A stretch of DNA of 64,000 nucleotides from IMGVR_UViG_3300042868_009074:1-64000; one strand, 5' to 3'; numbered from the stretch's first letter, positions 8,972-48,054 are shown. Notes: generated by a model not told the origin, from the letters alone. A program made the numbers and translations.

Positions 8972-9054
8972 ACCCGAGTGGCGGAATGGCAGACGCAGGG
9001 GGCTTAAACCCCCCGGAGGGCAACCTCTTACCGGTTCAAGTCCGGTCTCGGGTA
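8972..9054 (+). tRNA. tRNA-Leu(TAA)
   Basis: ACCCGAG/CTCGGGT acceptor stem, GGGGG-CT TAA AC-CCCCC anticodon arm, long variable arm, TTCAAGT T-loop; followed by CTA not CCA. Confidence 0.93.
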
Positions 9055-9079
9055 CTACAAATATAGAAAAGGAAATAAA

Positions 9080-9547
9080 ATGACCGAATTAACCCCACCA
9101 CTTCCTAATATGGATTCACCTAGATCCACAAACGGAATGAAGCAAATGGGAATCATTATGATTCTTCTTGCAGCCGTAGCTTTGCTTATTGGCATTCTCA
9201 TTGCATCACGCGATAACTCATCTGCTCCCGCAGCAACCAATGCTCCAGTCCAAACTTATGCTCCAGCTCCAGTTGTCAACAAGTATGAAGCTTATCTTGA
9301 CCATGTTTACAATAACTCTGGTCAAGCTAATACAATTACTAAAGCTTCTCTTATTGAATATGGCGATACTATTTGTTCTGCCTTAGATAATGGTAGAACA
9401 ATTCCTTATATCGTAGATTATCTTTCAAATAGTTCTTCTAGCGAAACCGATGCTGCTTTGTATGCCTCAGTAATCTTTGGAGCAATTACATATATCTGTG
9501 ATGAATACAAAGGTGATCTTAACCTTTATCTTTCTAACTCTAACTAA
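9080..9547 (+). CDS. Membrane-anchored DUF732-like protein
   Basis: N-terminal TM helix, Ala/Pro linker, YGDTICSALDNG...AITYIC two-Cys pattern typical of actinobacterial DUF732. Confidence 0.6.
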   Translation: MTELTPPLPNMDSPRSTNGMKQMGIIMILLAAVALLIGILIASRDNSSAPAATNAPVQTYAPAPVVNKYEAYLDHVYNNSGQANTITKASLIEYGDTICSALDNGRTIPYIVDYLSNSSSSETDAALYASVIFGAITYICDEYKGDLNLYLSNSN

Positions 9548-9816
9548 TGAAAAAATTCATTAGTAATTTAATTCCAAAAATCAGACCATTTACTGATGGA
9601 TTTGATTACGGTATTAAACATCACAAGACAATTGAAGATCATCACTTCTTCACTTATCCATATGGTTCAGATGAATATAAATTGTTCAAAAAACAAAATG
9701 ATCTTTATCGTAAAGGCATACGTATAGCAAGAGTATATTCTCGCTATAGAAATGAAATTCTTTTACTTATATATGTATTATCGACAGCATTGATATTTTC
9801 ACGCTGCGGTTGGTAA
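9547..9816 (+). CDS. Hypothetical protein with C-terminal TM
   Basis: 89-aa ORF coupled by TAATG. Confidence 0.65.
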   Translation: MKKFISNLIPKIRPFTDGFDYGIKHHKTIEDHHFFTYPYGSDEYKLFKKQNDLYRKGIRIARVYSRYRNEILLLIYVLSTALIFSRCGW

Positions 9817-9822
9817 ATACTT

Positions 9823-9895
9823 TCCCAGATAGCTCAGTTGGCAGAGCAGCGGACTGTTAATCCGCTTGTCGTAGGTTCGAGCCCTACTCTGGGAG
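9823..9895 (+). tRNA. tRNA-Asn(GTT)
   Basis: Canonical cloverleaf TCCCAGA/TCTGGGA, GCGGA-CT GTT AA-TCCGC. Confidence 0.95.
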
Positions 9896-9897
9896 CT

Positions 9898-10101
9898 ATG
9901 ACAAAATCTAAATATGACATGTCTCACCTACTAGGTAGACGTATAGAAATAATTACTTGCACCGATAGATACACTAATCTTGTTCCTGGCTCTCAGGGAA
10001 CAGTAACTGCGGTAGATTCCAACGGAACTGTATTCGCAAAATGGGATACTGGCTCTATTCTAGGCCTCATCCCTGGCGTTGATACCTGGAAATATCTATG
10101 A
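9898..10101 (+). CDS. DUF4314-like small protein (start reassigned to ATG 9898; upstream part of the listed ORF is the tRNA)
   Basis: GRRIE...TDRYTNLVPGSQGTVTAVDSNGTVFAKWDTGSILGLIPGVD pattern. Confidence 0.75.
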   Translation: MTKSKYDMSHLLGRRIEIITCTDRYTNLVPGSQGTVTAVDSNGTVFAKWDTGSILGLIPGVDTWKYL

Positions 10102-10390
10102 TCACTAATATAGTATTGTTATTAAATACTATATTTGCATTGTTTATTATAAGAATAATATACGATGCTATCAAACATAAAGGATAAAATGTTACATTAT
10201 ATTCAATCACTTATTACTCGTTATTCTTTTAAGCGTACTGCTAGACAACGTTATAAATCTTATAACAAAATACATCAAACTCCTTATGGAGTTCCCACTA
10301 GAAATCAAGGTTATTACGAATGAAAGATATACTAATCATATTAGTTATTGCAGGTGTTCTAACTTTTATAGTAGAAAAACTTTGGAAGCC

Positions 10391-10558
10391 ATGACATATA
10401 TTAAAATGCACGTAAAAGATAAACTGGACATTATTGCCCATGTTTTAACTCGCAACGGAGTTACTGTTTGGTATGGTATACCAGAACAAATAGTAGCTGA
10501 GCTTAAAGCTAATGGTTACAAAATTAAAAAACGTAAATCTTTTTCTAAAAATATTTAA
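10391..10558 (+). CDS. Small hypothetical protein
   Basis: Likely start at internal ATG of listed ORF 10286..10558. Confidence 0.55.
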   Translation: MTYIKMHVKDKLDIIAHVLTRNGVTVWYGIPEQIVAELKANGYKIKKRKSFSKNI

Positions 10559-10573
10559 CAACACCATACACCC

Positions 10574-10646
10574 GCGCCTTTAGCTCAGTTGGTAGAGCAG
10601 TGGACTTTTAATCCATGTGTCCCGGGTTCGACCCCCGGAGGGCGCA
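10574..10646 (+). tRNA. tRNA-Lys(TTT)
   Basis: GCGCCTT/AGGGCGC acceptor stem, GTGGA-CT TTT AA-TCCAT. Confidence 0.95.
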
Positions 10647-10648
10647 CT

Positions 10649-10927
10649 ATGACAAATGAACTAAACTCATTAAACGAACTTACAATTGGTGATATCGTAG
10701 GTGACACTAATCGTATCGTTATTGCCTGCACTAAAAAAGCAGAAAGAATTCCGGATGACTCTTATGCATATTGGGTTACCATATGCTTTAAAGAACAAGA
10801 GTATCATCCGTACGTAGTATGGAATGTTATTGCTCGTCCCGAGGGTTTTAGTTCCGTTGAAGGAGATTACTACTTTACTCTGGAAGAAGCTTTAATCCAA
10901 TACAAAAAACGTGGGGGAGAAGCTTAA
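10649..10927 (+). CDS. Hypothetical protein (start reassigned to ATG 10649)
   Basis: ATG begins 3 nt after the tRNA-Lys discriminator; upstream part of listed ORF is the tRNA. Confidence 0.7.
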   Translation: MTNELNSLNELTIGDIVGDTNRIVIACTKKAERIPDDSYAYWVTICFKEQEYHPYVVWNVIARPEGFSSVEGDYYFTLEEALIQYKKRGGEA

Positions 10928-11071
10928 TGAATAACTTAACTCTCACCAATATGATTGACCAGACTATCACCGATATCTCTGGTCAAAACTTTGTCCCCAC
11001 AGAAAAAATTATAGATCTATTATTAGATATTAGATTACACTTACTTATACAGGAAGAAGCAACACCCACTT

Positions 11072-11272
11072 ATGAAAGTTAAACTTAACGTAGAAATTCA
11101 TGCTGATATTCCAGGCGAATTTCAAGATGACGCAGATGCAGTTCAATTACTTCAAGAAGAAATAAACGAACGCTTTGAGATCAATTATGAATATGATAAA
11201 GGCGATCAACCTTCAGTTATGTTCGAATCAGCTCAAATTAAGATTTACATCCCAGGGGCAGGTAAACTATAA
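11072..11272 (+). CDS. Small acidic hypothetical protein
   Basis: 66-aa ORF in packed small-gene run. Confidence 0.6.
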   Translation: MKVKLNVEIHADIPGEFQDDADAVQLLQEEINERFEINYEYDKGDQPSVMFESAQIKIYIPGAGKL

Positions 11273-11564
11273 TGTGCTCAGGCTCAATAGAACAGCATGA
11301 TCTCGATCAATTAGAGCGGGAATTAGAAGAAAAAAAAGCTGTAGATAATTATGTTAATAACTACAGAGTATCTTTTTCTACTTTTAGCTTATTAGTTCCA
11401 TCTTTACGTGATTAATGCCATGCAGTGATGTGCAATCACTAAACATTTTGGGAGCTAACAGTCCCCATTGCTACGGGATCTTATTCGTTTACGACTAGCC
11501 CGTCCACAAAGTGGACATACCAATTCACCTTTTCCCCTAGACCAGGTGGCCACAACTGTCCTAC

Positions 11565-11638
11565 GGGCCCTTAGCTCAGTCGGTTAGAGCATCGGACTCA
11601 TAATCCGTGTGTCCTGGGTTCGAGCCCCAGAGGGCCCA
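11565..11638 (+). tRNA. tRNA with CAT anticodon (Ile2-like or elongator Met)
   Basis: GGGCCCT/AGGGCCC acceptor stem, TCGGA-CT CAT AA-TCCGT; no C1:A72 mismatch, so not initiator. Confidence 0.92.
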
Positions 11639-11782
11639 CTATGAACTTTATTATTTCATTTCTTGAACTCATTGTTATTTTATTAAATACAACAGTCTTC
11701 TTTAGATTTTTATTTATATCATTAGCAATGACTCTATACCTATACTCAGTCAAAAATATACGAACACAAAAGGAATACCCTA

Positions 11783-12097
11783 ATGACAAACACAATCCAT
11801 ACCCCTGAAGCTGCTCTTAAACATTATAAGATTCAACCAGCTTCTGATTCAGATTTTCCATACACTAAAGTTGGTTCTGAAATATACAATGCTGTTGTTA
11901 TACAGTTTATTGATATGGCTGATGATTTAGCTAAGAGTTTAAATAATAAACTTAAATTAGATTATCAAATTTCATCTCTTGATATACTTGATTCTCTAGC
12001 TACTGTTGGCCTAGAGCTTAATGTATTTGAAGAAGATCTTACCGAATACAACTGGCCATCTCTTGCCTATTTGGAAATTCTCAAAGAGAAAAAATAA
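11783..12097 (+). CDS. Hypothetical protein
   Basis: 104-aa ORF, AAGGA upstream. Confidence 0.7.
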   Translation: MTNTIHTPEAALKHYKIQPASDSDFPYTKVGSEIYNAVVIQFIDMADDLAKSLNNKLKLDYQISSLDILDSLATVGLELNVFEEDLTEYNWPSLAYLEILKEKK

Positions 12098-12360
12098 TGC
12101 CTTACATAGAGCAAGATGATCGTGTCTTTTTAGACCAAAGGGTTACATTTAACAATAATGCAATTCAAACTCCTGGCGAATTAAATTATGCTATTACTAA
12201 ACTATTAGATCACTACATTAGCTCTCATGGTTTATCCTATACCAACATCAATGAAGCCATTGGTGTGTTGGAGTGCTCTAAGATGGAATTATACCGTCGT
12301 ATAGCTGTTCCCTATGAAGATATTAAGATGCAAGAAAACGGAGACGTTTATACCGTATGA
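12097..12360 (+). CDS. DUF6899-like phage protein
   Basis: MPYI...GELNYAIT...NEAIGVLECSKMELYRR.AVPYED.K..ENGDVY pattern. Confidence 0.75.
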   Translation: MPYIEQDDRVFLDQRVTFNNNAIQTPGELNYAITKLLDHYISSHGLSYTNINEAIGVLECSKMELYRRIAVPYEDIKMQENGDVYTV

Positions 12361-12536
12361 GTAATAGAGTAAACGTTACCGCTCATGTATATAAGCCATC
12401 TACTGTCTATTATCCTGATAGTTCTAGACAATGTGCTCATGCAGATTGTACCACTCGTCTTTCGATGTATAACTCTACAGAATATTGCTGCACTCATGAA
12501 CGTCAATATCGCAATCTATATGTATATAAGGATTAA
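12357..12536 (+). CDS. Small Cys/His (zinc-finger-like) protein, 59 aa
   Basis: Manual translation includes CAHADCTTRLSMYNSTEYCCTH; ATGA-coupled. Confidence 0.6.
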   Translation: MSNRVNVTAHVYKPSTVYYPDSSRQCAHADCTTRLSMYNSTEYCCTHERQYRNLYVYKD

Positions 12537-12538
12537 TT

Positions 12539-13009
12539 ATGGGAATGGATGTTTACGGCGTTAAGCCTAAAAACGAAGCTGGAGAATACTTTCGCTCCAA
12601 TGTTTGGTTCTGGCACCCTTTATGGGATTGCCTAGAAAACCTTCATCCAACACTGTGTGAGAAGTGCGAATCTCCTCACGACAATTCAGGCTCTGGCCTT
12701 AATGCTAGAGACTCTTTAGCTTTATCTAAGCTTTTAAAAAAAGATTTAGATTCAGGTGTTATCGAAGAATATATTAAAAAATATTATGAAGCTATTGCTT
12801 TAGTTCCTCTTGATGATTGCAAGTTTTGCGACAACAAGGGTACTCGAGACTGGCCTTCTGATGATGGCACAGTCCTCACTAAGCAATGCAACGCTTGTGC
12901 AGGAACTCTCAAAGTTGCTAACTTTGTTACTCATTATCATATGGACATTGAGCTCATGAAAGAGTTTCAAATCTTTCTTGAAAACTGTGGTGGATTTACA
13001 ATTTGTTAA
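12539..13009 (+). CDS. Conserved phage protein with CxxC zinc-ribbon insert
   Basis: MGMDVYG...FRSNVWFWHPLW; CKFC and CNAC. Confidence 0.75.
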   Translation: MGMDVYGVKPKNEAGEYFRSNVWFWHPLWDCLENLHPTLCEKCESPHDNSGSGLNARDSLALSKLLKKDLDSGVIEEYIKKYYEAIALVPLDDCKFCDNKGTRDWPSDDGTVLTKQCNACAGTLKVANFVTHYHMDIELMKEFQIFLENCGGFTIC

Positions 13010-13245
13010 TCAAACCCAAGAACCCTCCTGCTTCTCCTCCTCTCCCTATCAGAGAAAGAATACTTGCCAAATACCATAATGATCTCACCATGATGGATCA
13101 CATAGATGCCTTTGTTCTATACGAAGCAGCTATGCATAAACTATATGTTAAGGTTAACCCCTGGCTTGCCAGAAATAAGTATGGCAAACCTTCGAGAACT
13201 AGAACTCGAAAAGATTTTGAGCCTAAAGAGGAAGCTTATGATTAG
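13003..13245 (+). CDS. Hypothetical protein
   Basis: 80-aa ORF, TTG start. Confidence 0.55.
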   Translation: MLIKPKNPPASPPLPIRERILAKYHNDLTMMDHIDAFVLYEAAMHKLYVKVNPWLARNKYGKPSRTRTRKDFEPKEEAYD

Positions 13246-13455
13246 CTCCCTTTAGCCAAATAGATTTATAGCAGCTAGTGAATTCAAACTTACTACGTGG
13301 TAAAACACAGAAATAAGCCGACTGAATTGCTAACTAAAAGCAATGATGCTAGTGGCCCCATATCGCCCCATTGCCTGCTATAATTAGTTTAAAGGATAAA
13401 ACATGTCTTCACCCTTATTACATTATCGAATACCCACCCTACTTCTCGTTTTCAC

Positions 13456-13529
13456 GAGCTAGTAGCTCAGTTGGTAAGAGCATCATTCTTATAAAATGAA
13501 GGTCCGGGGTTCAATCCCCCGTTAGCTCA
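13456..13529 (+). tRNA. tRNA-Ile(TAT)
   Basis: GAGCTAG/TTAGCTC acceptor stem, TCATT-CT TAT AA-AATGA, CGGGG-TTCAATC-CCCCG. Confidence 0.88.
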
Positions 13530-13554
13530 CAATTAAAATTTATTAGGAGAAATC

Positions 13555-14236: not shown

Positions 14237-14939
14237 TAATATTTACAACACTAATGACGATGATATCTTCGATGATTACCAAGAACCTTCTACTTCAACT
14301 GATCCACTCCTTGAAGCTCCTCTTGTTAATGAAGATAAATCATTTGAAAAAGTTTTCTCAGATTTAAATTCTCCATTTGAATCACTCATCCAAAATTCTT
14401 CACTCAAAGTAAACTTTGGGGAAGCTTTCTACAACGCTGCTCATGAGTGGATTATGCAAGGCTATCGTGAAGCTGGCGATATATCTATTATAGATTCACT
14501 TGTTAAAATGAGCGATGGTAAATATCTTTATGAACACCGTCTCAATTGCTCCCGGCAAACTCTAGCTCGTAAAAAAACTGTACTTAAATTTTTGTCTATT
14601 CTCCTAGACAACACAGATGAATCTAACACTATTGTTTCTAATAATACGCATCATGATTTTAATTTCTCTGAAGCTTACTTTAGTATGTTCTTTCGTAGCT
14701 TTTACAATATACAGCTACATACTTTTCATCATGAAACCGCTTTGTATAAAGCTTTGTGTGAAATACTAGAAGTAGAACCAGATCACGATCTTTGTGATCC
14801 AAATGTAGAAACTGTTGCTATTACTAGCACTACAGACTACATTAATACTTTGTATATGCAATACTTCGACAGAGATTCCCTACAGCAGAAAATTGATAAG
14901 TATCTTGAAGAAATTTCCTTTAATAAAAATCAAGCCTAA
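14229..14939 (+). CDS. Hypothetical acidic protein
   Basis: 236-aa ORF overlapping whiB end. Confidence 0.75.
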   Translation: MSNNIYNTNDDDIFDDYQEPSTSTDPLLEAPLVNEDKSFEKVFSDLNSPFESLIQNSSLKVNFGEAFYNAAHEWIMQGYREAGDISIIDSLVKMSDGKYLYEHRLNCSRQTLARKKTVLKFLSILLDNTDESNTIVSNNTHHDFNFSEAYFSMFFRSFYNIQLHTFHHETALYKALCEILEVEPDHDLCDPNVETVAITSTTDYINTLYMQYFDRDSLQQKIDKYLEEISFNKNQA

Positions 14940-15360
14940 AACAGCTCAACTACTCTTGACTATAGGTAGTGCAGCTGGCTTAGCAGCTATCAATTACACG
15001 ATTATACATAATCCTATTGTATTCGTATTTGTTATGTCTTTATTCTTACATGAATTTGGACATTACTTTATTGCCAGGAAGTATGGCGCTAACGCCGACC
15101 TTCCTTATTTTATCCCTTTATTCCCATTGAATATTGGAATAACAAGAATTAGAAATTTAAAACCCAAACATATTCCAGCTGTTTCTATAGCTGGTCCAAT
15201 GTTTGCTTCTATGTTTTTAATATTCTTTATAATGTTTAATTCTATTTATAGATTATTTGCATTCATGCCATTATTTTTAATTTTAGCTTTTGAAATTATA
15301 TTGAACTATTTTGGTTCTGATGGAAAAAAATATCGTAAATATAATTTACAAACAGTCTAG
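14905..15360 (+). CDS. M50 (site-2 protease-like) membrane metallopeptidase; start uncertain (TTG 14905)
   Basis: LHEFGH zinc motif, VSIAGP, TM segments, SDG equivalent of the D ligand. Confidence 0.78.
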   Translation: MKKFPLIKIKPKTAQLLLTIGSAAGLAAINYTIIHNPIVFVFVMSLFLHEFGHYFIARKYGANADLPYFIPLFPLNIGITRIRNLKPKHIPAVSIAGPMFASMFLIFFIMFNSIYRLFAFMPLFLILAFEIILNYFGSDGKKYRKYNLQTV

Positions 15361-16069: not shown

Positions 16070-17884
16070 ATGACTGTCAATTATTCAATTATTCAATCAG
16101 ACGAAGGTGCTATAGCAGTACAATCTACTGTTCAGTCCTTTAATCTAGACCACATTACTAACAAAGATATTGTTTCTTTTTATACCCGGTTCTCTCAATT
16201 CAGTGCTTGGGATACAGGCATTCTTCCAGTAGACGGAAGTGGTGTTCTATCCATACGTACTGCTGGCGAATACACTCAGTTTGCCTATCAGCATAAACCT
16301 GGTCTTTACCATGTTAACTGGGGTGAATCAGAAGGTGCAGCAGCTGCAGCATACTATCTTGCTCAACCATATCGAATCATTATTTGTGACATGAAAGATG
16401 GCAATCTTCTTGGAGCTAGAATGTTCTACTCCCCATATCCCATAACCAACCCATCTCAGCCACTGTACCATGTTAATCTTCCTAATATTAACTGCAATGG
16501 CTACCGTGGCAATGGTGTTGGCTGGATCTGCCTATACCAAAATGAAGATTGGTCTACTCTTCCACTTAATGAACGGATTGTTCGATTCATTGAACGCTGT
16601 TCAGGTGTAGAAACTTACAACGATGCCAATATGTCAGAGACTGATGGTACTCGTTTTTACAAGAAAAATGATAAACCATCTTATTTCTGGGACCCAGTAG
16701 AATGGGAAACCAAATCCGCCGAAGAAGGATATCAATGGACTCTAGATGAAGATCTTTTGATTCCTGTCCTAGTTAAGTCCATGGACAGTCAGTCTGAGCA
16801 TTGCTCTAACGGTGTTCCCCTAACATTTGCTGATGCTCTTGTAGGAGACTACCAGGCTTACTACTATGACAAAAAGCACACTAAGACCATCAATGCTGTC
16901 ATACGTCCTGATAAAGAATTGGATCCTAAAGAAATCCTTTCTTTCTTTGTAGCTTCTTACAACGGAGCTAATTCCCAAAGTAATCCTTTATTAAATAATA
17001 CTTTTGAATCTTCTGAATTAGTTAAACAAAACGTTGGCTCTGCCACTTTTACTGGTTCAGTATTAACTAACGCTCCTGCAGCTCATGCTTCTCATGAAGA
17101 TTCCCCAGATGTTTATTGTGAGACTTGTGAAAATTACTTTACTCAAGATGATATATCTGGAGACTACTATGGCAATAATGTTTGCACTGGTTGCTTAGAA
17201 GACAGTTTTACCTATATTGAATCTGCTGATGCTTATTTTAATCATGAAGATGAAAATATTATATATATAGAACTTCAGGCTACTTCCTTCCATACTGAAT
17301 TTGACTCAGTTGAGATATGTGAAAACTGCAATCAAGCATACGGTAAAGAAGGAAAGAATAACCCTCCTGACAAAGTCATTTGTTTAGATAACAATGACAA
17401 CGTTTGCCCTAAGTGCATTGAGAACTATGCTTACGATAAAGGTATTTCTACTGGGACTTGTGTTTCTTGTGCTAAGTTTGTTGTTACTGAACCAGATTTT
17501 TCTCATCATTACCTCAGCACTCACATTAGTCTTCCATATTATGACTATGAGACTAACGAATCATCGTCAGACGTTAAAGTAGTAACATTCTGTTCTTCTT
17601 GTCAAGACAAACTGCTGATATGTCCATGTGGATTGGTTAAATCTAAATCTTTAGAAGATTTCAATCCTTGTACCCCAATACAATCTGGCACAGGTGAAGA
17701 TGCTATTTCTATAGATAAAGCTTGTGTCTCCTGTGTCAACTTTACCTTTCATGACTCAGAAGAGTTAGAAGCAAATTTTGTTCCTGTATCAATCAGTAAT
17801 TTTACAAATTATCAGAATCAACTTACTTCTATTACTTCAATCCATCAAGGTTTTCAGAAAACTGTAGATGAAGAACCATTTTAA
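16070..17884 (+). CDS. Prokaryotic E2-like (family D-like) protein with C-terminal multi-CxxC region
   Basis: YYLAQPY..I...RMFYSPYPITNPSQPLYHVNLPNIN...GWICL; seven CxxC pairs downstream; lies next to JAB/E1/Ubl. Confidence 0.6.
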   Translation: MTVNYSIIQSDEGAIAVQSTVQSFNLDHITNKDIVSFYTRFSQFSAWDTGILPVDGSGVLSIRTAGEYTQFAYQHKPGLYHVNWGESEGAAAAAYYLAQPYRIIICDMKDGNLLGARMFYSPYPITNPSQPLYHVNLPNINCNGYRGNGVGWICLYQNEDWSTLPLNERIVRFIERCSGVETYNDANMSETDGTRFYKKNDKPSYFWDPVEWETKSAEEGYQWTLDEDLLIPVLVKSMDSQSEHCSNGVPLTFADALVGDYQAYYYDKKHTKTINAVIRPDKELDPKEILSFFVASYNGANSQSNPLLNNTFESSELVKQNVGSATFTGSVLTNAPAAHASHEDSPDVYCETCENYFTQDDISGDYYGNNVCTGCLEDSFTYIESADAYFNHEDENIIYIELQATSFHTEFDSVEICENCNQAYGKEGKNNPPDKVICLDNNDNVCPKCIENYAYDKGISTGTCVSCAKFVVTEPDFSHHYLSTHISLPYYDYETNESSSDVKVVTFCSSCQDKLLICPCGLVKSKSLEDFNPCTPIQSGTGEDAISIDKACVSCVNFTFHDSEELEANFVPVSISNFTNYQNQLTSITSIHQGFQKTVDEEPF

Positions 17885-17916
17885 TAAAATAAAAACAAAT
17901 CTTTATAAGGAGATTT

Positions 17917-19572
17917 ATGTCTAACGATACTAAGGAAATAAAAACCATCACTTTAGATGATTTAAATTACTTTTGGATGCCTAACGGTGCTCCATGCTTT
18001 ATCGCCAATAACTATGATGTTGTTGATGATTACTGCGATACTGTTGAAAGTTTTGGCTTTCAAATTTATTATATCATAACCGATAAAGAAACAAGTAAAA
18101 CTGTTCAAGTCAAAAACGACAAAGGAGTTATGATTCCAACTGAAGTATATGATTATACTCCAGCTGTATTTAAAGTTGTTAATAACTTTACAGGTCGTGC
18201 CGTCATGGAATCCAAAGAACCTTTCGGTACTTCATTCTGCCCAGTAAAAGAAGTAGCAGAGTATACTATGCCTTCAATTCCTCGGATTATTATCGATAAA
18301 CTTGATGAGTTCTTTAGATTAGTTCATGCTCAGCATGGCACTGAGTCTATTGTTATCTTGACTTATGATACCACTAAAGAAGGTTCTGAAGGTTGGGGCG
18401 TCTTAGTCCCCGAGCAAGAGAACAACTCTGTTCACTGCAAGTATGACAATGATTCTATTGCTGCTATTAAACCAGATCATGTCATGATTGTTGGCTCTGT
18501 CCACAGTCATCCTGAGATGTCGGCATATGCTTCTGGTACAGACCATGAAGACCAAGCTGACTTTGATGGCATCCATATTACTTATGGCTGGCAAAAATCA
18601 GTTAATGCTGGAGCTACCCAGTATCACTTGGAGCTTCAGATTGGTGGTTCTAACTATGTACTCAAACCTGAAGATGTATTTGAATACAACCCTCCTCCCA
18701 CTAAGGACCCTGACCCAGAGGTTCTAGAGTGGAGCTCTAAAGTAAAAAAAGTATCCCCCCCGCTTATGGGGGTTTCGGGTACTCAGGTGGCGCATACACC
18801 AAGCCAGTCGTACCAGGCAAGTTGGGCTCTTCAAGCGACCAACTCTCGACCTATTCAAGCTGGTATGGATACGATTAGTTCTTTCGATAGAACTAAATTC
18901 ATATCTGACCTAGGTACAGTTGAAGCAGATGCTGTAGTTGCTATAGAAATAGATGATTCAACTAATCCAGATCGCAACTGCTTGATCTGTTATTTTCCTC
19001 TAACTTTAGCTGATCTCAACACTGGCTTCTGCATGACTTGTGATACTCCTATAATCACTCCAGAAATGGGTCATAGAGATATTCTAGCATTCCTAGACTA
19101 TTACTGTGACCAACGTGCTTTGGATCCTACAGTTCCTTATTATGTTTACTGCATGGATGAAAATAATAATTCAAATAACTTTTTGATTAATATTAAATCT
19201 GCTGGTCAAATTTCTAATCTAGAAGATCCTGAAGTAGAATTATATTCTGGTGCTGACTTTCTAGAGTATACAGTTTGCTGCAGTACGCCATTAACTATGG
19301 TGGAACTGTGCAAGTGCACTGTTACTGTCTTAGAGGAACACGTTGCTGACTTTGACAAAGCACACAAGGAAGTAGACATCTATGATTCTACTGACGACTG
19401 CTTGTCATGTGATAGTTATTATCAAACTTCATGTCCTCAATTTAAAAATGCTTTAGTTAATTATGTAACTTATAATTCTATTGTAAATGTTCAAATAAAA
19501 AAATGCGACAACTATGTCTATTATAAAGACTTAACTGCCGTCAATAATTTCGAAAGTACTTATTATGACTGA
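17917..19572 (+). CDS. JAB/MPN+ metallo-isopeptidase with C-terminal Cys-rich domain (possible -1 frameshift isoform ending at 18878)
   Basis: HGTES (Glu) and GSVHSHPEMSAYASGTD JAMM motif; CLIC, CMTC, CLSC in the C-terminal part. Confidence 0.85.
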   Translation: MSNDTKEIKTITLDDLNYFWMPNGAPCFIANNYDVVDDYCDTVESFGFQIYYIITDKETSKTVQVKNDKGVMIPTEVYDYTPAVFKVVNNFTGRAVMESKEPFGTSFCPVKEVAEYTMPSIPRIIIDKLDEFFRLVHAQHGTESIVILTYDTTKEGSEGWGVLVPEQENNSVHCKYDNDSIAAIKPDHVMIVGSVHSHPEMSAYASGTDHEDQADFDGIHITYGWQKSVNAGATQYHLELQIGGSNYVLKPEDVFEYNPPPTKDPDPEVLEWSSKVKKVSPPLMGVSGTQVAHTPSQSYQASWALQATNSRPIQAGMDTISSFDRTKFISDLGTVEADAVVAIEIDDSTNPDRNCLICYFPLTLADLNTGFCMTCDTPIITPEMGHRDILAFLDYYCDQRALDPTVPYYVYCMDENNNSNNFLINIKSAGQISNLEDPEVELYSGADFLEYTVCCSTPLTMVELCKCTVTVLEEHVADFDKAHKEVDIYDSTDDCLSCDSYYQTSCPQFKNALVNYVTYNSIVNVQIKKCDNYVYYKDLTAVNNFESTYYD

Positions 19573-20320
19573 TCAAAAACGTTTTGTTCTTGTTGGAGCT
19601 GGTGGCATTGGCACTTGGCTTGCAGCTGGACTTGCTCGCATGTTAGAGTTTAAATATCCTGGCTCTGCTCTTATTATCGTCGATGGTGATACATATGAAG
19701 AACGGAACAAAGAGCGTCAATCATTTTCTCAGATGGGAAACAAAGCAGTTGCTACTGCCCATGACTTGACCCAACAGTTTCCTAACACTATGTTTATCCC
19801 AGTCCCTAAATGGGTTGTTGACGACAACTTTGGTGGAGTCACAGATGATCAAGATTCTCCTAAAATTAAAGCTTCTGCTTTGATTACCGAAAACGATGTA
19901 GTCTTTGCTGTTGTTGACAACTTTGCTGCTCGTAAGATTATCTTTGATGCTGCTCAAAACTTAGACAACGTTGACATCTTTACTGGTGGCAACGATGACG
20001 CTTTATTTGGTAGTGTTTATCATTACCAACGCCGTGATGGTCACGATGTAACTGACCATCCAGTGCATACTCATTCTGAATATGAAAATCCTCCAGACAA
20101 AAATCCTGGTGAATTATCATGTCAAGATCGTGCCAAAATCGAAGGTGGTACTCAGCTATTGGCTACCAATATGGCTGTAGCTGCCTTCCTTCTTGGTCGC
20201 GTACAAAAGACAATTGTGTCTAATCAAAATCCCGACGAAGCAGAAATTTATTTTGACCTTGGTATCGGCAAGTCCGAACCATATGATCGTCGACCAACCC
20301 TACAACCTGTAGTACAATAA
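19565..20320 (+). CDS. ThiF/E1-like ubiquitin-like protein activating enzyme
   Basis: GAGGIG, VDGDTYEERNKERQ, DNFAAR, candidate catalytic Cys in LSCQD. Confidence 0.9.
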   Translation: MTDQKRFVLVGAGGIGTWLAAGLARMLEFKYPGSALIIVDGDTYEERNKERQSFSQMGNKAVATAHDLTQQFPNTMFIPVPKWVVDDNFGGVTDDQDSPKIKASALITENDVVFAVVDNFAARKIIFDAAQNLDNVDIFTGGNDDALFGSVYHYQRRDGHDVTDHPVHTHSEYENPPDKNPGELSCQDRAKIEGGTQLLATNMAVAAFLLGRVQKTIVSNQNPDEAEIYFDLGIGKSEPYDRRPTLQPVVQ

Positions 20321-20334
20321 AGGAGATAACAGTT

Positions 20335-20592
20335 ATGACTGCTATGAATAATACCGGAGGAGCAGCACAGTCTGCTTCTGGCCAAATGGCAAATGTCCGT
20401 TTTGGCGTTTACACTCAACCAGCACCAGTTGCTGGAAAGACTGTTCGCGAAGTTCGCGAGCAGTTCTCAAAGCTTTGGGGAATACCTTCTGATGCAGTAG
20501 CATACAAGGGTAAAGACAAGCTCGATGAGGATACTGTTATCGGTGCATCTGATAACGTAGAGTTCCACCGCCGTGCTGGCGAAAAGGGTTAA
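20335..20592 (+). CDS. Ubiquitin-like (beta-grasp) protein ending in Gly
   Basis: VRFG...VAGKTVREVR..F...WGIP...LDEDTVIG.SDNVEF.RRAGEKG; SD AAGGAG; directly after E1. Confidence 0.78.
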   Translation: MTAMNNTGGAAQSASGQMANVRFGVYTQPAPVAGKTVREVREQFSKLWGIPSDAVAYKGKDKLDEDTVIGASDNVEFHRRAGEKG

Positions 20593-20614
20593 TTTAACTC
20601 TTCCCTAAATCTGA

Positions 20615-20662
20615 GGGAGAGTATGCTTAACTTACTTTGAGTGTACTCTCCCACTTTTTTTC
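20615..20662 (+). terminator. Intrinsic terminator after the Ubl gene
   Basis: 15-bp stem GGGAGAGTATGCTTA/TGAGTGTACTCTCCC followed by a T run. Confidence 0.8.
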
Positions 20663-20695
20663 AAAGCCACCAGTTACTAATCAAGGTTTATATTA

Positions 20696-22312
20696 ATGCT
20701 TTTTTCTCAAATAAAATTAGGTCATCCAACTTTATGGATTAAATCTATAGATTCTTTTAAGACTATAGAATCTATTGTAAATTATCCATCTAGAATTTAT
20801 TTTACATTAGATCCAGTTAAAGGTTTTTGTGAATATAAAAACCAAACTTGGAAACCAGTATTGGTAGACATGCCAAACCCAGATGATCCTGGTACAACTA
20901 TTAAAAAAACTACTTTTGATTTTGTAGTTGCAAACGAATTCCTTTCTACTTACCTAGAAGATAAGCCAAAGACATTTATATTTAACATCTTTGCTCAAGC
21001 TCAAGAGTTTGTAGGAAGTTATGCTGGCTTATTTAACCACGCTATGATGCAGTATCGTGATGCCTTTTGGACTAATGATTTATCTGAAATGCCTCTTCAG
21101 TATATTGTTACATCCCCATTTGATTGCCCTGAAGAATTTGCACACTTGTTTAAATTCGTAGAAATGGGCTATCCTTCTTCTGAAGAACTAACATCAGTTC
21201 TTTCTCATATCTCTACCTCTTCTGACGGTCAGTTAGTTAAGCCAGAGACAGTAAAAGATATTGTCAATGCCGGACTTGGTTTATCTGAGTCTGAGTTTAT
21301 CAACTTATCTTTACAATCTGTTTTAGAATGTGGCGAAGTATCTTCTGAATATATTTATTCTCAGAAGATGAGCGACATGAAGAAGAACGGCATACTTGAA
21401 ATCATCAAGCCTAAAGTTCACTTTCAAAATATTGGTGGCCTTGATGCCATTAAAGATTTGATTATACGTAATGCTAATCTATGGCATAACCCAGAACAAG
21501 CTGCTAAGTTTGGTATTTCTCCAATCCGTCGCATGCTTATGGTTGGGGTTCCAGGTACTGGCAAGTCAGCTATCTGTGAAGCTACTGCTAATGCCCTGGG
21601 TTTGGACCTAGCTCGTACTGGCATTAGCCAGGTAATGAACTCTTACATTGGTCAATCAGAGCAGAATATGCGTACTGTATTTAAACAAATCAATGCAATG
21701 GCTCCACTTTGTGTTTGGATCGATGAGTTTGGTCGAGATCTATCCGGTGGCTCCAGCTCGTCTCATGTAGATGGTGGCACTACAGACCGTGTCCACGGAG
21801 AGTTCCTTACAGGCCTTCAGGAGCTTCCTGACAACGTATTCTTGATGTGTGCAGCTAATCAGCTAGAACACCTTAAACCAGAGATGCTTCGTGCAGATCG
21901 TTTCGATAAGATTATGTTTGTAGGCTTGCCTTCATTTAGTGAGCGTTCTGATATTATTAAAATATATCTTTCCGACATTGACACAGATCATGTGTATAAT
22001 TATGATGCGATTTCTCATGCTACTCAGTATTTTACTGGTGCTGAGATCAAGTCTCTTATTAAGGAAGTTAAATTTTACGTTAGTTCTTCAGAACTTCGTG
22101 CAATCAATACCAATGATGTAGTTTCTTATGCTCCTAAAATGAGAAACATTCTTTGGAATAAAAGTCGTCCAATGATTCAAGACCTCTACAAAACAGCTAT
22201 AGATCAATGGGATTGGGCATCGACGGATCAGTTCGAAGATGCTAAACTTATAATGAACCCCAATCGTTCTACAGCACCTGTTTCAGCCCCTAAAATACCA
22301 GTATTTAAATAG
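20696..22312 (+). CDS. AAA+ ATPase (Ycf46/SpoVK/CDC48-like)
   Basis: GVPGTGKS Walker A, VWIDE Walker B, AAN...PEMLRADRFD second region of homology. Confidence 0.92.
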   Translation: MLFSQIKLGHPTLWIKSIDSFKTIESIVNYPSRIYFTLDPVKGFCEYKNQTWKPVLVDMPNPDDPGTTIKKTTFDFVVANEFLSTYLEDKPKTFIFNIFAQAQEFVGSYAGLFNHAMMQYRDAFWTNDLSEMPLQYIVTSPFDCPEEFAHLFKFVEMGYPSSEELTSVLSHISTSSDGQLVKPETVKDIVNAGLGLSESEFINLSLQSVLECGEVSSEYIYSQKMSDMKKNGILEIIKPKVHFQNIGGLDAIKDLIIRNANLWHNPEQAAKFGISPIRRMLMVGVPGTGKSAICEATANALGLDLARTGISQVMNSYIGQSEQNMRTVFKQINAMAPLCVWIDEFGRDLSGGSSSSHVDGGTTDRVHGEFLTGLQELPDNVFLMCAANQLEHLKPEMLRADRFDKIMFVGLPSFSERSDIIKIYLSDIDTDHVYNYDAISHATQYFTGAEIKSLIKEVKFYVSSSELRAINTNDVVSYAPKMRNILWNKSRPMIQDLYKTAIDQWDWASTDQFEDAKLIMNPNRSTAPVSAPKIPVFK

Positions 22313-22324
22313 ATAGGATAAATA

Positions 22325-22966
22325 ATGTCAGATGAAGTAATGAATTCCGTACAGGAATTCTTAACACAATTAGATGATGATTCAAATTCACCAGAGCAAG
22401 TATTCTCTAGTGACAACAAAGATTATGAAAATGATCTTTACAAGAAATGGTTTCGCTCTAAGAGCCAGAGTGGATTTTTATCCATTCGTCCTTGGTTCAC
22501 CGGAATGAAATTTAAAATTGATATTGGCAAAACTTCTCCAGATGGAAAGTTGATTAGCCATACTCATCTTTATGTAGACGCTGTAGACTTTGCGGCTTAC
22601 CTTCGTGCTATTGTACAGGGCAACGCTGCTTCTATATTCCCAGCAAATGATCGCATGGGGATTCCATCTCCAGAAGGTTTTGCTTCCTATGGTGGATCTA
22701 AGGTAGAAGGTAAAGCTATCTCTCGCATCTTTAAGGCCCACCACTGGACTAATGGTGACACAGTAGACCCTAACGCTTTCGTCTGGAAGTCTGGTCATTT
22801 TGCAGCAAGAGTCTCTGACACTGGTGCATTTATACCTGATATGAAGTCTCCTTTATCTGTCGACTCCATTAAAGTTACTCGTCAAGATATCTGTTCTATA
22901 TCTTATATTTTAGATTTAGCTCTTAATTCTTATGTAGCTAACAATCAGAGCTGGTACGAGGTTTAA
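22325..22966 (+). CDS. Hypothetical protein
   Basis: 213-aa ORF. Confidence 0.8.
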   Translation: MSDEVMNSVQEFLTQLDDDSNSPEQVFSSDNKDYENDLYKKWFRSKSQSGFLSIRPWFTGMKFKIDIGKTSPDGKLISHTHLYVDAVDFAAYLRAIVQGNAASIFPANDRMGIPSPEGFASYGGSKVEGKAISRIFKAHHWTNGDTVDPNAFVWKSGHFAARVSDTGAFIPDMKSPLSVDSIKVTRQDICSISYILDLALNSYVANNQSWYEV

Positions 22967-22967
22967 T

Positions 22968-23345
22968 ATGACTGAAGAAAATACTACATCTGTTTTTACA
23001 GTTGATCAATTGAAGGAATACGTAGAATCTTTATTCGTTAACTTTTCTCAAATGATTGATGAGAAGTTTGACGAAATAGATAAAAAAGTAGAAGCTTTTG
23101 AAAAGCAAATAGCAACTCTGGTTATTGGCTTTGGTGAACAAGCTGTCTTTCTTGAGGCTTTGCTAGCCCAACTATCTTTTGCTACTGAAGATGAACAAAA
23201 AGCTTTTCAAACTAACGTTGGAGAAGCTAGAAAACAAATGCTGAAAGTGATGAAAGATGGATCTGAAAACCTCGTGGCCGGTGAGAATGAAAGACTTGCC
23301 TCAGCCATTAATGACGTGGTTAATTCAAAGTCAGCTGAGCTCTGA
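22968..23345 (+). CDS. Hypothetical coiled-coil protein
   Basis: 125-aa helical ORF. Confidence 0.75.
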   Translation: MTEENTTSVFTVDQLKEYVESLFVNFSQMIDEKFDEIDKKVEAFEKQIATLVIGFGEQAVFLEALLAQLSFATEDEQKAFQTNVGEARKQMLKVMKDGSENLVAGENERLASAINDVVNSKSAEL

Positions 23346-44387: not shown

Positions 44388-44469
44388 AATTTTAAAAATC
44401 CTTACTAAAGCTAATCTAGAAAATAAGCGTTACTAGTTATATATAGTAACCTATGTATGGAGGTATGTT

Positions 44470-44685
44470 ATGGCAGCAAAGAAGCCAGCTAAGAAAAATA
44501 TAACAAGTGTTAAAGAAGTTAAAAAAGAATTGCCCGGAAAAGCTATTATGTATTTTGGGGTTCCCGAAAGAGCATTCGTTTGCCCGTCTTGCAATAAAAC
44601 TTTAATTAAAGGTATTATATACGAACACAATAGTAGTTCGTATTGCACTAGAGGTTGTATCCCAGCCCCAGAAGTGGTAGTATAG
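44470..44685 (+). CDS. Small zinc-finger protein
   Basis: CPSC...YCTRGC; SD GGAGG. Confidence 0.65.
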   Translation: MAAKKPAKKNITSVKEVKKELPGKAIMYFGVPERAFVCPSCNKTLIKGIIYEHNSSSYCTRGCIPAPEVVV

Positions 44686-44689
44686 CCCC

Positions 44690-45309: not shown

Positions 45310-45313
45310 AGTA

Positions 45314-45520: not shown

Positions 45521-45561
45521 ATTTTAATTCCTTTCATTAAAACTTATCATATCTATCAAAT

Positions 45562-47260: not shown

Positions 47261-47272
47261 TTTAAATACCTA

Positions 47273-48007: not shown

Positions 48008-48054
48008 CCAAACCTTTCTAAATTAAAAGCCCTCGAGCTTATTTAATATAGTAA

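What the first reader, a model, noticed from the sequence alone, without database searches (positions are those of the whole stretch)
16070..22312. Phage-encoded ubiquitin-like conjugation operon: E2-like, JAB, E1, Ubl, AAA ATPase
Five consecutive co-directional genes cover activation (ThiF/E1 with candidate catalytic Cys and no sulfur-transfer partner nearby), conjugation (E2-like), deconjugation (JAMM HSH...D), the modifier (beta-grasp ending ...AGEKG) and a CDC48/Ycf46-like AAA unfoldase. Established: E1/E2/JAB/Ubl operons occur in bacteria (PRTRC cassettes, antiviral Bil-type systems that conjugate Ubls to virion proteins). A complete set in a lytic phage core, next to SSB and other replication genes, suggests a viral protein-tagging pathway for targeting host defence proteins, remodelling complexes or countering host Ubl defence.
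Basis: partly seen in the sequence, partly recalled or inferred. Interest (0 to 1): 0.87.

Follow-up and report, generated by a model that had tools for sequence, protein, structure and literature searches.

The report
Jumbo-phage ubiquitin-like protein-tagging cassette
A very large uncultured phage encodes its own small ubiquitin-like protein, the enzyme that activates it, a protease that trims or removes it and a probable transfer enzyme; this is an undescribed viral relative of a little-studied plasmid cassette, and it suggests that some phages tag proteins much as eukaryotic cells do.

Summary
The five co-directional genes are real. Four assignments hold. The 251-aa protein is a ThiF-type E1 with an intact adenylation site and an invariant Ser-Cys. 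The 551-aa protein is a JAB protease with a complete JAMM motif. The 85-aa protein has a ubiquitin fold and an invariant tail ending GEKG. The 538-aa protein is a classical AAA+ ATPase.

The "E2-like" call for the 604-aa protein has only indirect support. Its N-terminal 300 residues give a confident model with no PDB match and no Prok-E2 profile hit. It is, however, homologous to a protein of cultured Bacillus jumbo phages that weakly matches Prok-E2_D and PRTRC_B, and one cysteine (C154) is conserved throughout.

Those Bacillus phages have the same E2-like, JAB, ThiF order. They encode the modifier as four or five head-to-tail repeats that match Prok_Ub and PRTRC_C.

The core is therefore a four-gene, phage-borne, strongly diverged relative of the uncharacterised PRTRC (Iyer type 6d) cassette. 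The AAA+ gene is a conserved neighbour but probably not part of the cassette: a conserved hairpin follows the Ubl gene, distant relatives have genes inserted there, and the Bacillus loci examined have no AAA+ hit.

Protein conjugation is the likeliest function. The targets are unknown.

The parts
16070..17884 (+). Candidate E2-like (PRTRC_B / Prok-E2_D-like) protein, 604 aa. Residues 1-300 (16070-16969) form a conserved globular domain with invariant C154 in a GW-x-C-LY motif. Residues about 300-604 form a variable Cys-rich tail with several CxxC pairs, absent in some relatives.
   Evidence: Conservation. AF2 pLDDT 96. No PDB fold match. BFVD match to Bacillus phage WH1 gp214 at E 8.5e-10. hhalign 94%, E 9.5e-8. 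The homologue KLEB27-3 gp196 hits Prok-E2_D at 2.7e-4 and PRTRC_B at 1.1e-3.
17917..19572 (+). JAB/JAMM metalloprotease, 551 aa. It has an N-terminal alpha+beta extension (about residues 1-125), a JAMM core (about 130-260) and a Cys-rich C-terminal part with invariant CxxC pairs at 355/358 and 372/375. That C-terminal part is a separate ORF in divergent relatives.
   Evidence: Prok-JAB 2e-5. PRTRC_A 1.5e-4. E143, H196, H198, S206 and D209 invariant. Weak Rpn11-like and L37Ae zinc-ribbon PDB hits. Split ORFs in L062 and L066.
19565..20320 (+). Single-domain E1-like adenylyltransferase (ThiF family, PRTRC type), 251 aa, with no rhodanese domain. C186 is the only cysteine in the window protein and is invariant.
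   Evidence: ThiF 7e-14. PRTRC_ThiF is the best NCBIfam hit, 3.6e-7. Invariant motifs. hhalign 99.3% to Bacillus-phage ThiF.
20335..20592 (+). Ubiquitin-like modifier, 85 aa. It has a disordered N-terminus (residues 1-17) and a beta-grasp core. The C-terminal E-F-H-R-R-A-G-E-K-G is invariant within the closer clade; the final G-E-K-G is kept in every relative checked.
   Evidence: Alignments. AF2 and Foldseek (ubiquitin, NEDD8, ISG15; TM 0.6-0.7 normalised to the target). hhalign 91%, E 1e-6 to the Bacillus-phage Prok_Ub repeat units.
20615..20652 (+). Terminator-like hairpin with a 16-bp stem followed by a T-run, between the Ubl and AAA+ genes.
   Evidence: Best terminator-like site in 13-27 kb. 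A stable hairpin (-22 to -32 kcal/mol) sits at the same place in all 14 related loci, with different stem sequences.
20696..22312 (+). Classical single-domain AAA+ ATPase, 538 aa. It has Walker A (GVPGTGKS), Walker B (WIDEF) and a Y-I-G pore loop. It is a conserved neighbour whose membership of the cassette is doubtful.
   Evidence: Pfam AAA 4e-24 and phrog_8638 1e-66. CDC48, PAN and FtsH models score far below cut-off. IetA-like. Conservation. Separated from the Ubl gene in divergent loci.
22325..23345 (+). Two ORFs (213 aa and 125 aa) that always follow the AAA+ gene. Function unknown.
   Evidence: Synteny. No Pfam, NCBIfam, PDB or phage hits.
15672..16064 (+). Conserved 130-aa ORF immediately upstream of the E2-like gene. 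It has no conserved Cys or His. Function unknown.
   Evidence: Synteny. Alignment. No family hits.
14815..15360 (+). M50-like membrane metalloprotease ORF, conserved upstream in most related loci, including the most divergent one.
   Evidence: Peptidase_M50 1.2e-5, below cut-off. Synteny.

Best explanation
The four genes at 16070-20592 are a phage-borne, strongly diverged version of the prokaryotic Ubl / E2-like / JAB / E1 cassette known as PRTRC (Iyer type 6d).

Proposed mechanism:
1. The 85-aa beta-grasp protein is the modifier. Its C-terminal Gly85 is either already exposed or is exposed by the JAB protease. In relatives the JAB would remove a 2-residue extension, and in Bacillus jumbo phages it would cut a 4- or 5-unit head-to-tail polyprotein after ...K-G.
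2. The 251-aa E1 adenylates Gly85 with ATP and probably takes the modifier onto Cys186 as a thioester.
3. The modifier passes to the invariant Cys154 of the 604-aa protein, which acts as the E2-like carrier, and from there to lysines of target proteins.
4. The fast-evolving zinc-ribbon tails of the E2-like and JAB proteins are the likeliest target- or partner-binding parts.
5. The JAB protease also reverses conjugation.

Shown here: the folds and families of the Ubl, E1 and JAB proteins, their catalytic residues, the conserved gene order, and homology to PRTRC-type proteins.

Inferred: thioester transfer, the E2 role of the first protein, conjugation to lysines, and any target. The adjacent AAA+ unfoldase may act on tagged proteins, but the evidence places it in a separate unit.
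For: - E1: ThiF domain. PRTRC_ThiF is the top NCBIfam hit. The adenylation motifs and S185-C186 are invariant from the window clade through Bacillus phages to a plasmid PRTRC-like ThiF.
- JAB: the full JAMM motif is invariant, with a PRTRC_A hit.
- Ubl: beta-grasp model with ubiquitin-family fold matches. The ...G-E-K-G end is invariant, and in some relatives it is followed by two extra residues (SL, NI, SK or LA).
- Homology to the repeat unit of Bacillus-phage proteins (hhalign 91%, E 1e-6). Those proteins are 4x and 5x tandem Ubls matching Prok_Ub at 3e-27 and PRTRC_C at 1e-20, above its cut-off.
- E2-like candidate: C154 is invariant in 60 diverse family members and is kept in the Bacillus homologues. 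The homologue hits Prok-E2_D and PRTRC_B across the Cys region. The secondary-structure order (helix, beta-meander, long loop carrying the conserved Cys, helix) is compatible with an elaborated UBC fold.
- The order E2-like, JAB, ThiF is identical in the window clade (53 IMG/VR loci), in 3 of the 4 MAG contigs (the fourth is too short to show it) and in three cultured Bacillus jumbo phages.
- No rhodanese, desulfurase or PP-loop domain was found in the neighbouring ORFs scanned.
- E1 and Ubl are 73-85% identical across the related loci, while the E2-like and JAB proteins are 37-57% identical. This fits conserved chemistry with diverging specificity.
Against: - The E2-like domain has no direct profile hit to any Prok-E2, UBC or PRTRC_B model. 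A very confident model finds no E2 in the PDB by Foldseek; the best E-value is 0.09.
- The bridging hits (2.7e-4 and 1.1e-3) are below the curated cut-offs.
- The H-x-N motif that resembles the E2 HPN motif is not kept in the Bacillus homologues.
- The window Ubl and JAB score below the PRTRC cut-offs, or not at all.
- PRTRC itself has never been characterised biochemically as far as I could find. The analogy therefore rests on prediction (PMC1779556).
- No target is known.
Confidence: 0.6

Rival explanations
1. Conjugation happens without an E2, as with archaeal SAMPs or Urm1. The E1 alone activates the Ubl and the JAB processes and removes it. The 604-aa protein would then be something else: the main substrate, an adaptor or E3-like specificity factor that works through its zinc-ribbon tail, or a cysteine enzyme of another kind.
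For: A confident model of the N-terminal domain has no UBC or any other PDB fold match. No Prok-E2 profile hit was found in 60 family members. The tail is variable, Cys-rich and dispensable. The links to Prok-E2_D and PRTRC_B are sub-threshold.
Against: One cysteine is conserved across very distant phages, inside a dense block of invariant polar residues. The gene keeps its position directly upstream of JAB and E1, exactly as PRTRC_B does. Both weak family hits are to E2-like families and both cover the Cys region.
Confidence: 0.17
2. The Ubl is a sulfur carrier, not a protein modifier. The E1 adenylates it, it becomes a thiocarboxylate, and it donates sulfur to a small molecule or nucleic-acid modification. 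The JAB trims the C-terminal extension or releases an adduct, as in the QbsE/QbsD and CysO/Mec+ pathways (my knowledge of those pathways).
For: The E1 is short and of the MoeB/ThiF type. Two-residue C-terminal extensions occur in some relatives. A JAB next to a ThiS/MoaD-like protein is a known sulfur-pathway theme (PMC1779556). The phage carries many tRNA genes. One sulfurtransferase-complex chain appears among the fold matches (rank 37).
Against: The neighbours scanned contain no rhodanese, cysteine desulfurase, PP-loop or synthase partner. According to PMC1779556, the E1-like enzymes of these E1+JAB operon types never carry a rhodanese domain. The tail ends K-G rather than the G-G typical of sulfur carriers. 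Head-to-tail poly-Ubl genes in the Bacillus phages are a hallmark of modifiers. The best fold matches are ubiquitin, NEDD8 and ISG15. A conserved-Cys partner protein is present.
Confidence: 0.1
3. All five genes, and perhaps the two ORFs downstream, form one degradation pathway like the eukaryotic ubiquitin-Cdc48/proteasome pathway: proteins tagged with the Ubl are recognised and unfolded by the adjacent AAA+ ATPase.
For: The AAA+ gene lies downstream of the Ubl gene in every complete locus of the freshwater clade. It has intact Walker motifs and an aromatic-hydrophobic-Gly pore loop. Its nearest models are CDC48, PAN and FtsH.
Against: A conserved terminator-like hairpin separates the two genes. 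Three or four unrelated genes are inserted between them in divergent relatives. The 14.7-kb Bacillus-phage loci have no AAA+ hit among the ten WH1 genes scanned and no gene annotated as AAA+. Related AAA+ proteins occur alone in Rhodobacter, Rhizobium and Mycobacterium phages. No protease partner is adjacent.
Confidence: 0.13

Closest known systems
PRTRC cassette (ParB-related, ThiF-related; TIGR03734-03738), which corresponds to operon type 6d of Iyer, Burroughs and Aravind 2006 (PMC1779556). It is found on ICEs and plasmids.
   Same: It has the same four parts: a small Ubl with a C-terminal Gly, an E2-like protein with a conserved Cys but no classical HPN histidine, a JAB with an extra N-terminal alpha+beta domain, and a short E1 without a rhodanese domain. 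The best NCBIfam hits of the window E1 and JAB are PRTRC_ThiF and PRTRC_A. The Bacillus-phage homologues hit PRTRC_C, B, A and ThiF.
   Different: The window proteins score far below every PRTRC cut-off, or not at all. There is no adjacent ParB gene. In the window the Ubl gene lies after the E1 gene. The E2-like and JAB proteins carry long zinc-ribbon tails. The E2-like domain is about twice the size of a UBC core. The carrier is a jumbo phage, not a conjugative element. PRTRC itself has no experimentally known function.
Cassette of cultured Bacillus jumbo phages vB_BceM_WH1 (gp211-gp216), Edson and vB_BauM_KLEB27-3 (gp199-gp194). In GenBank most of these genes are annotated as hypothetical.
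   Same: The E2-like, JAB and ThiF proteins are homologous and in the same order. The Ubl units are homologous and have the same A-G-x-K-G end.
   Different: The Ubl is encoded upstream as 4 or 5 tandem 57-aa units with a short C-terminal cap. Two other genes (127-147 aa and 509-559 aa) lie between it and the E2-like gene. The E2-like protein has no zinc-ribbon tail. No AAA+ hit was found in the scanned part of the locus. Identity to the window proteins is only 12-27%.
Bil (BilABCD) antiphage ubiquitination systems, operon type 6c (PMC10557695)
   Same: It has separate Ubl, E1, E2-like and JAB proteins, conjugates through thioesters, and uses the JAB to process the Ubl.
   Different: Bil has a large multidomain E1 and a CEHH-type E2. 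It is a bacterial defence system that tags phage proteins. Here the E1 is a single 251-aa domain, the system is encoded by the phage, and the sequence affinities are with PRTRC, not Bil.
Bub (6E/DUF6527) pathways and type II CBASS Cap2/Cap3 (PMC11601596, PMC10097602)
   Same: These are bacterial E1 and E2 machineries with a JAB peptidase, carried on mobile elements.
   Different: Bub uses oxyester intermediates and lacks catalytic cysteines, whereas both candidate cysteines are invariant here. Cap2 is an E2-E1 fusion that conjugates a CD-NTase, not a free Ubl. The PADLOC E1-E2 hits cover only the nucleotide-binding part of the window E1.
Archaeal SAMP/UbaA/JAMM system with Cdc48 and the proteasome, and the eukaryotic ubiquitin-Cdc48 pathway
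   Same: A Ubl with a short E1 and a JAMM protease, with a Cdc48/PAN-like AAA+ ATPase encoded nearby.
   Different: SAMP conjugation needs no E2. The AAA+ protein here has a single ATPase domain, is transcriptionally separable, and has no proteasome partner.

Membership tests
Ubiquitin-like beta-grasp modifier | Beta-grasp fold | tested here: met
   AF2 model with pLDDT 74.7 overall and a core of 83-88, topology beta-beta-alpha-beta-beta-beta. Foldseek against the PDB gives ubiquitin, NEDD8, parkin Ubl and ISG15 at probability 1.00, with TM 0.6-0.7 normalised to the target.
Ubiquitin-like beta-grasp modifier | Flexible C-terminal tail ending in Gly, free or exposed by processing | tested here: met
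   ...G-E-K-G is invariant. It is terminal in most relatives and is followed by 2 residues in some. The homologous Bacillus-phage units are joined head to tail after K-G.
Ubiquitin-like beta-grasp modifier | Covalent attachment to target lysines | not testable with these tools
   Needs biochemistry or mass spectrometry.
E1-like adenylyltransferase (ThiF/MoeB/Uba) | Rossmann GxGxxG, Arg finger and Mg-binding Asp of the adenylation site | tested here: met
   Pfam ThiF 7e-14, above its cut-off. G11/G13/G14/G16, R51-Q52, N59-K60 and D118-N119...R123 are invariant.
E1-like adenylyltransferase (ThiF/MoeB/Uba) | Catalytic cysteine after the adenylation core | tested here: inconclusive
   S185-C186 is invariant in all 7 distant sequences and C186 is the only Cys in the window protein. 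Placing it in the crossover loop is inferred from its spacing relative to MoeB and ThiF; no structural test was done.
JAMM/MPN+ metalloprotease | E ... H-x-H-x(7)-S-x(2)-D zinc site | tested here: met
   E143, H196, H198, S206 and D209 are invariant. Prok-JAB E 2e-5, 0.2 bits under the cut-off. Weak Rpn11-like PDB hits.
E2 / UBC superfamily (including Prok-E2_D and PRTRC_B) | Recognisable UBC fold or profile match | tested here: inconclusive
   There is no direct Pfam, NCBIfam or PDB profile hit and no E2 among the Foldseek PDB matches listed for a pLDDT-96 model. The homologous KLEB27-3 gp196 does hit Prok-E2_D at 2.7e-4 (21.1 bits, cut-off 25) and PRTRC_B at 1.1e-3. It is linked to the window domain by hhalign (94%), and the related WH1 gp214 is linked by Foldseek (8.5e-10).
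E2 / UBC superfamily (including Prok-E2_D and PRTRC_B) | Conserved catalytic cysteine | tested here: met
   C154 is invariant in 60 representatives and aligns to a conserved Cys in all three Bacillus-phage homologues. The second Cys (C142) and H134 are not kept there.
PRTRC cassette (TIGR03734-03738) | Each protein scores above the curated NCBIfam cut-off | tested here: not met
   Window E1: 29.8 bits against a cut-off of 144.75. Window JAB: 21.4 bits against 101.8. The Ubl and the E2-like protein have no hit. Only the Bacillus-phage poly-Ubl passes PRTRC_C, with 73.6 bits against 45.95.
PRTRC cassette (TIGR03734-03738) | Linked ParB-family gene | tested here: not met
   No ParB domain in the four upstream or five downstream ORFs scanned. 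A true PRTRC-like plasmid locus, scanned the same way, shows ParB next to ThiF.
Bil (BilABCD) | Large multidomain E1 and a CEHH-type E2 | tested here: not met
   The E1 is a single 251-aa ThiF domain. The candidate E2 has no CEHH-like profile hit. The family description is taken from PMC10557695.
CDC48 / PAN unfoldases (classical AAA+ clade) | AAA domain with Walker A and B, a pore loop and an AAA lid | tested here: met
   Pfam AAA 4e-24. AAA_lid_3 scores 3.6e-4, below its cut-off. GVPGTGKS, WIDEF and Y-I-G are visible and conserved.
CDC48 / PAN unfoldases (classical AAA+ clade) | Equivalog-level match, or the tandem D1-D2 architecture of CDC48 | tested here: not met
   110 bits against a cut-off of 802 for CDC48. 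PAN 109 bits against 500. Only one AAA domain is present.

The most novel reading that the evidence does not exclude
Jumbo phages of at least two unrelated host groups run a complete ubiquitin-like conjugation pathway of their own: freshwater phages, which may infect Bacteroidota, and cultured Bacillus phages. In the Bacillus phages the modifier is made as a polyubiquitin-like precursor. The pathway would tag either the phage's own virion or assembly proteins or host proteins during infection. That would make it the first viral counterpart of the bacterial Bil, CBASS and Bub systems, and it would be testable in a culturable system.
Probability: 0.5. Interest if true: 0.85.

Novelty: new variant of a known kind. 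Interest (0 to 1): 0.72.

Why it matters
All experimentally studied prokaryotic ubiquitin-like conjugation systems (type II CBASS, Bil, Bub) are encoded by the cell and, where a role is known, act against phages. A phage-encoded cascade would reverse that picture. It would mean the virus covalently remodels proteins, either its own or the host's.

It would also give the long-predicted but uncharacterised PRTRC / type 6d family its first tractable biological context. Homologous cassettes exist in cultured Bacillus jumbo phages, where gene deletions and virion proteomics are possible.

The E2-like domain gives a confident model with no solved relative, so it is either a very derived UBC fold or a new Ubl-carrier fold. 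The polyubiquitin-like genes in phages are a striking parallel to eukaryotic polyubiquitin.

Tried and rejected
- DNA search of the region against 50,697 phage records found no match.
- Direct profile searches of the 604-aa protein and of 60 family members found nothing: Pfam, NCBIfam, PADLOC, PHROGs and PDB sequences.
- Foldseek of its model against the PDB found nothing, and no E2 among the matches listed.
- PDB sequence and profile searches with the E1 and Ubl alignments found nothing significant.
- I tested whether the upstream 130-aa ORF could be the true E2. It has no conserved Cys or His, so I rejected it.
- I tried a plasmid PRTRC-like locus from Geoalkalibacter as a bridge. Only ParB and ThiF are recognisable there, and its neighbours do not match the window proteins.
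- I compared the AAA+ gene's downstream 213-aa partner with the gene after the AAA+ of Rhodobacter phage RcTiptonus. There is no similarity.
- I compared the Bacillus-phage 127-aa and 509-aa proteins with the window's 130-aa, AAA+, 213-aa and 125-aa proteins. There is no similarity.
- I scanned the genes inserted between the Ubl and AAA+ genes in divergent loci. There were no informative domains.
- Searches for a paper on phage WH1 or KLEB27-3, or on phage-encoded or PRTRC-type Ubl systems, found none.
- I could not verify the 'SSB / replication genes' context.

Full report
**What is there.** The interval holds five co-directional ORFs with short gaps or small overlaps:
- 16070-17884 (604 aa)
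- 17917-19572 (551 aa)
- 19565-20320 (251 aa)
- 20335-20592 (85 aa)
- 20696-22312 (538 aa)

The window is the first 64 kb of IMG/VR contig UViG_3300042868_009074, which is 267,766 bp long. It carries 8 tRNA genes and has PHROG hits for a helicase and a protease. It has no DNA similarity to any of 50,697 deposited phage genomes. It is therefore an uncultured jumbo-size phage. Relatives are 170-216 kb contigs, mostly from environmental metagenomes.

**The three secure parts.**

*E1.* The 251-aa protein has a ThiF domain (E 7e-14), and its best NCBIfam model is PRTRC_ThiF. The following are invariant from the window clade through Bacillus phages to a plasmid PRTRC-like ThiF: GxGGxG, D42, R51-Q52, N59-K60, D118-N119...R123 and S185-C186. 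C186 is the protein's only cysteine. There is no rhodanese domain.

*JAB.* The 551-aa protein has a JAB core with E143, H196-x-H198, S206 and D209 invariant. Pfam Prok-JAB scores 0.2 bits under its cut-off, and there is a weak PRTRC_A hit. The core is preceded by an extra N-terminal domain, as described for type 6d JABs (PMC1779556). It is followed by a Cys-rich region with invariant CxxC pairs.

*Ubl.* The 85-aa protein has no family hit, but its AF2 model is a beta-grasp with a flexible tail. The best PDB matches are ubiquitin, NEDD8, the parkin Ubl domain and ISG15. In 163 database clusters it is 60-98% identical. The last ten residues are essentially invariant. The final G-E-K-G is kept even in a relative with only 28% identity, and is either terminal or followed by two residues: SL, NI, SK or LA. 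That is the signature of a modifier whose C-terminal glycine is the reactive end and is exposed by a protease when needed.

**The disputed part: is the first gene an E2?** Its N-terminal 300 residues define a compact family. There are 196 clusters at 50% identity among 1.84 billion proteins, with a sharp E-value edge and no distant relatives. The C-terminal half is a variable array of CxxC pairs that is missing in some relatives.

C154 is invariant in 60 diverse members, and H134, N136 and C142 are nearly so.

The tests gave mixed results.
- Against: no Pfam, NCBIfam, PADLOC or PDB profile hit, even when 60 members were scanned one by one. A pLDDT-96 model finds nothing in the PDB by Foldseek (best E 0.09) and no E2 among the matches listed.
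- For: the same model matches a 241-aa viral protein at E 8.5e-10. Its length and locus identify it as gp214 of Bacillus phage vB_BceM_WH1. Profile comparison confirms the relationship (94%, E 9.5e-8, 207 columns).
- For: the orthologue in phage KLEB27-3 (gp196) hits Prok-E2_D (E 2.7e-4, 21.1 bits against a cut-off of 25) and PRTRC_B (E 1.1e-3), in both cases across the conserved cysteine.
- In the Bacillus proteins only the C154 equivalent is kept. The histidine is not.

I therefore call this protein a candidate E2-like Ubl carrier: plausible, not demonstrated.

**The Bacillus-phage bridge.** Three cultured jumbo phages (WH1, Edson and KLEB27-3, 217-234 kb) have E2-like, JAB and ThiF genes in the same order as the window. 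hhalign probabilities are 94%, 95.5% and 99.3%.

Three genes upstream lies a protein made of five (WH1, Edson) or four (KLEB27-3) head-to-tail 57-aa units. Each unit ends A-G-(T/V)-K-G, and a short cap follows the last unit. These proteins match Pfam Prok_Ub (3e-27) and PRTRC_C (1e-20, above its cut-off). Their unit aligns end to end with the window Ubl (91%, E 1e-6).

This is a polyubiquitin-like precursor, which implies cleavage after K-G. WH1 gp211 is annotated 'virion structural protein' in GenBank. I could not find the basis for that annotation.

**What system it is.** All affinities point to the PRTRC cassette, that is operon type 6d of Iyer et al. 2006. That type has a Ubl with a C-terminal Gly, an E2-like protein with a conserved Cys but no classical His, a JAB with an N-terminal extension, and an E1 without rhodanese. 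The window version fails the membership tests: scores are far below the cut-offs and there is no ParB neighbour. It differs in gene order, in its zinc-ribbon tails and in being carried by a phage. It is not Bil-like (single-domain E1), not Bub-like (both cysteines present) and not Cap2-like (no fusion).

**Extent of the unit.** The order 130-aa ORF / E2-like / JAB / E1 / Ubl / AAA+ / 213-aa / 125-aa recurs in 53 IMG/VR loci and, as far as each contig extends, in 4 MAG contigs.

Several observations separate the AAA+ gene from the core.
- A stable hairpin follows the Ubl gene in all 14 loci checked, with different stem sequences. In the window it is the best terminator-like site of the region.
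- Three or four unrelated genes sit between the Ubl and AAA+ genes in the two divergent relatives inspected. Two further loci and one MAG contig show a gap of similar size.
- No AAA+ hit was found among the ten scanned genes of the Bacillus phage WH1 locus.
- Similar AAA+ genes stand alone in many phages.

The ATPase itself looks active and unfoldase-like, with Walker A and B motifs and a Y-I-G pore loop. A functional link remains possible but is not supported.

**Mechanism and rivals.** The best-supported reading is reversible Ubl conjugation: JAB maturation, adenylation by the E1, thioesters on C186 and then C154, and transfer to lysines. E1 and Ubl are 73-85% identical across the related loci, while the E2-like and JAB proteins are 37-57% identical with variable tails. 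This fits conserved chemistry with shifting specificity. I give this reading 0.6.

The rivals are:
- E2-independent conjugation, with the first protein as substrate or adaptor (0.17);
- a sulfur-carrier pathway (0.10). This is disfavoured by the lack of any sulfur-transfer partner, by the K-G end, by the poly-Ubl genes and by the ubiquitin-like fold matches;
- a five-gene tag-and-unfold pathway that includes the AAA+ (0.13).

Targets are unknown. Candidates are the phage's own virion or assembly proteins, host proteins, or interference with host Ubl-based defence. None was testable here.

**Distribution and novelty.** The E2-like domain is essentially phage-restricted. Among 185,579 species genomes only four short MAG contigs carry it. 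They are assigned to inconsistent taxa, and three show the same synteny while the fourth is too short to tell. I found no paper describing a phage-encoded PRTRC-like or complete Ubl system. The kind of system has been predicted since 2006. The phage-borne, zinc-ribbon-extended variant and its link to phage polyubiquitin-like genes appear to be new.

Noticed in passing
IMG/VR contig UViG_3300042868_009074, about 221.5-242.4 kb (locus L037), outside the window: The same 267.8-kb contig holds a second, diverged copy of the whole block; the E2-like domain is 58% identical and the E1 76%. The percent identities of that copy are the same as those of a separate 104-kb contig (L038). The long contig may therefore be a join of two related phage genomes rather than one genome with a duplication.
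   Followed up: partly
window 20615-20652: A 16-bp-stem hairpin with a T-run lies just after the Ubl gene. A hairpin of similar strength but different sequence (often GTGGGGG...CCCCCAC) occupies the same spot in all 14 related loci. In some loci it has no T-run, so it may be a terminator or an RNA-stability or processing element.
   Followed up: partly
L071:1781-2680 (Bacillus phage vB_BceM_WH1 gp211) and L072:4038-4745 (vB_BauM_KLEB27-3 gp199): These are polyubiquitin-like genes of 5 and 4 tandem 57-aa Prok_Ub units in cultured phages. One is annotated 'virion structural protein' and the other 'hypothetical'. I found no publication on them.
   Followed up: yes
window 14815-15360: An M50-like (site-2-protease-like) membrane metalloprotease ORF is conserved upstream of the cassette in most related loci, including the most divergent one. 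Its score is below the Pfam cut-off.
   Followed up: no
window 7013-8530 and 20696-22312: The window encodes a subtilisin-like S8 protease, and its AAA+ ATPase hits PADLOC IetA models (E 3e-25). From my own knowledge, IetA pairs with a serine protease in the IetAS defence system. The two genes are 12 kb apart here, so this may be a coincidence.
   Followed up: no
window 8972-13530, 30190, 39440, 58616: There are eight tRNA genes (Leu-taa, Asn, Lys-ttt, Met, Ile-tat, Arg-tct, Gly-tcc, Ser-gct). Five lie in a loose cluster just upstream of the cassette region.
   Followed up: no
window about 42000-52000: A block with higher G+C (0.41-0.44 against about 0.35 elsewhere) holds large minus-strand ORFs of 621, 519 (with an fn3 domain) and 1025 aa. 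None has a PHROG hit.
   Followed up: no
window 53322-54692 (minus strand): A fusion of a HAD-type hydrolase domain and a nucleotidyl-transferase domain (phrog_3980 and phrog_8468). It may be part of a sugar-nucleotide or DNA-modification pathway.
   Followed up: no
L062:12807-13379 and L066:8409-8957: In divergent relatives the Cys-rich C-terminal part of the JAB protein is a separate ORF, with a weak double zinc-ribbon hit. This shows that the zinc-ribbon module is an independent unit.
   Followed up: partly
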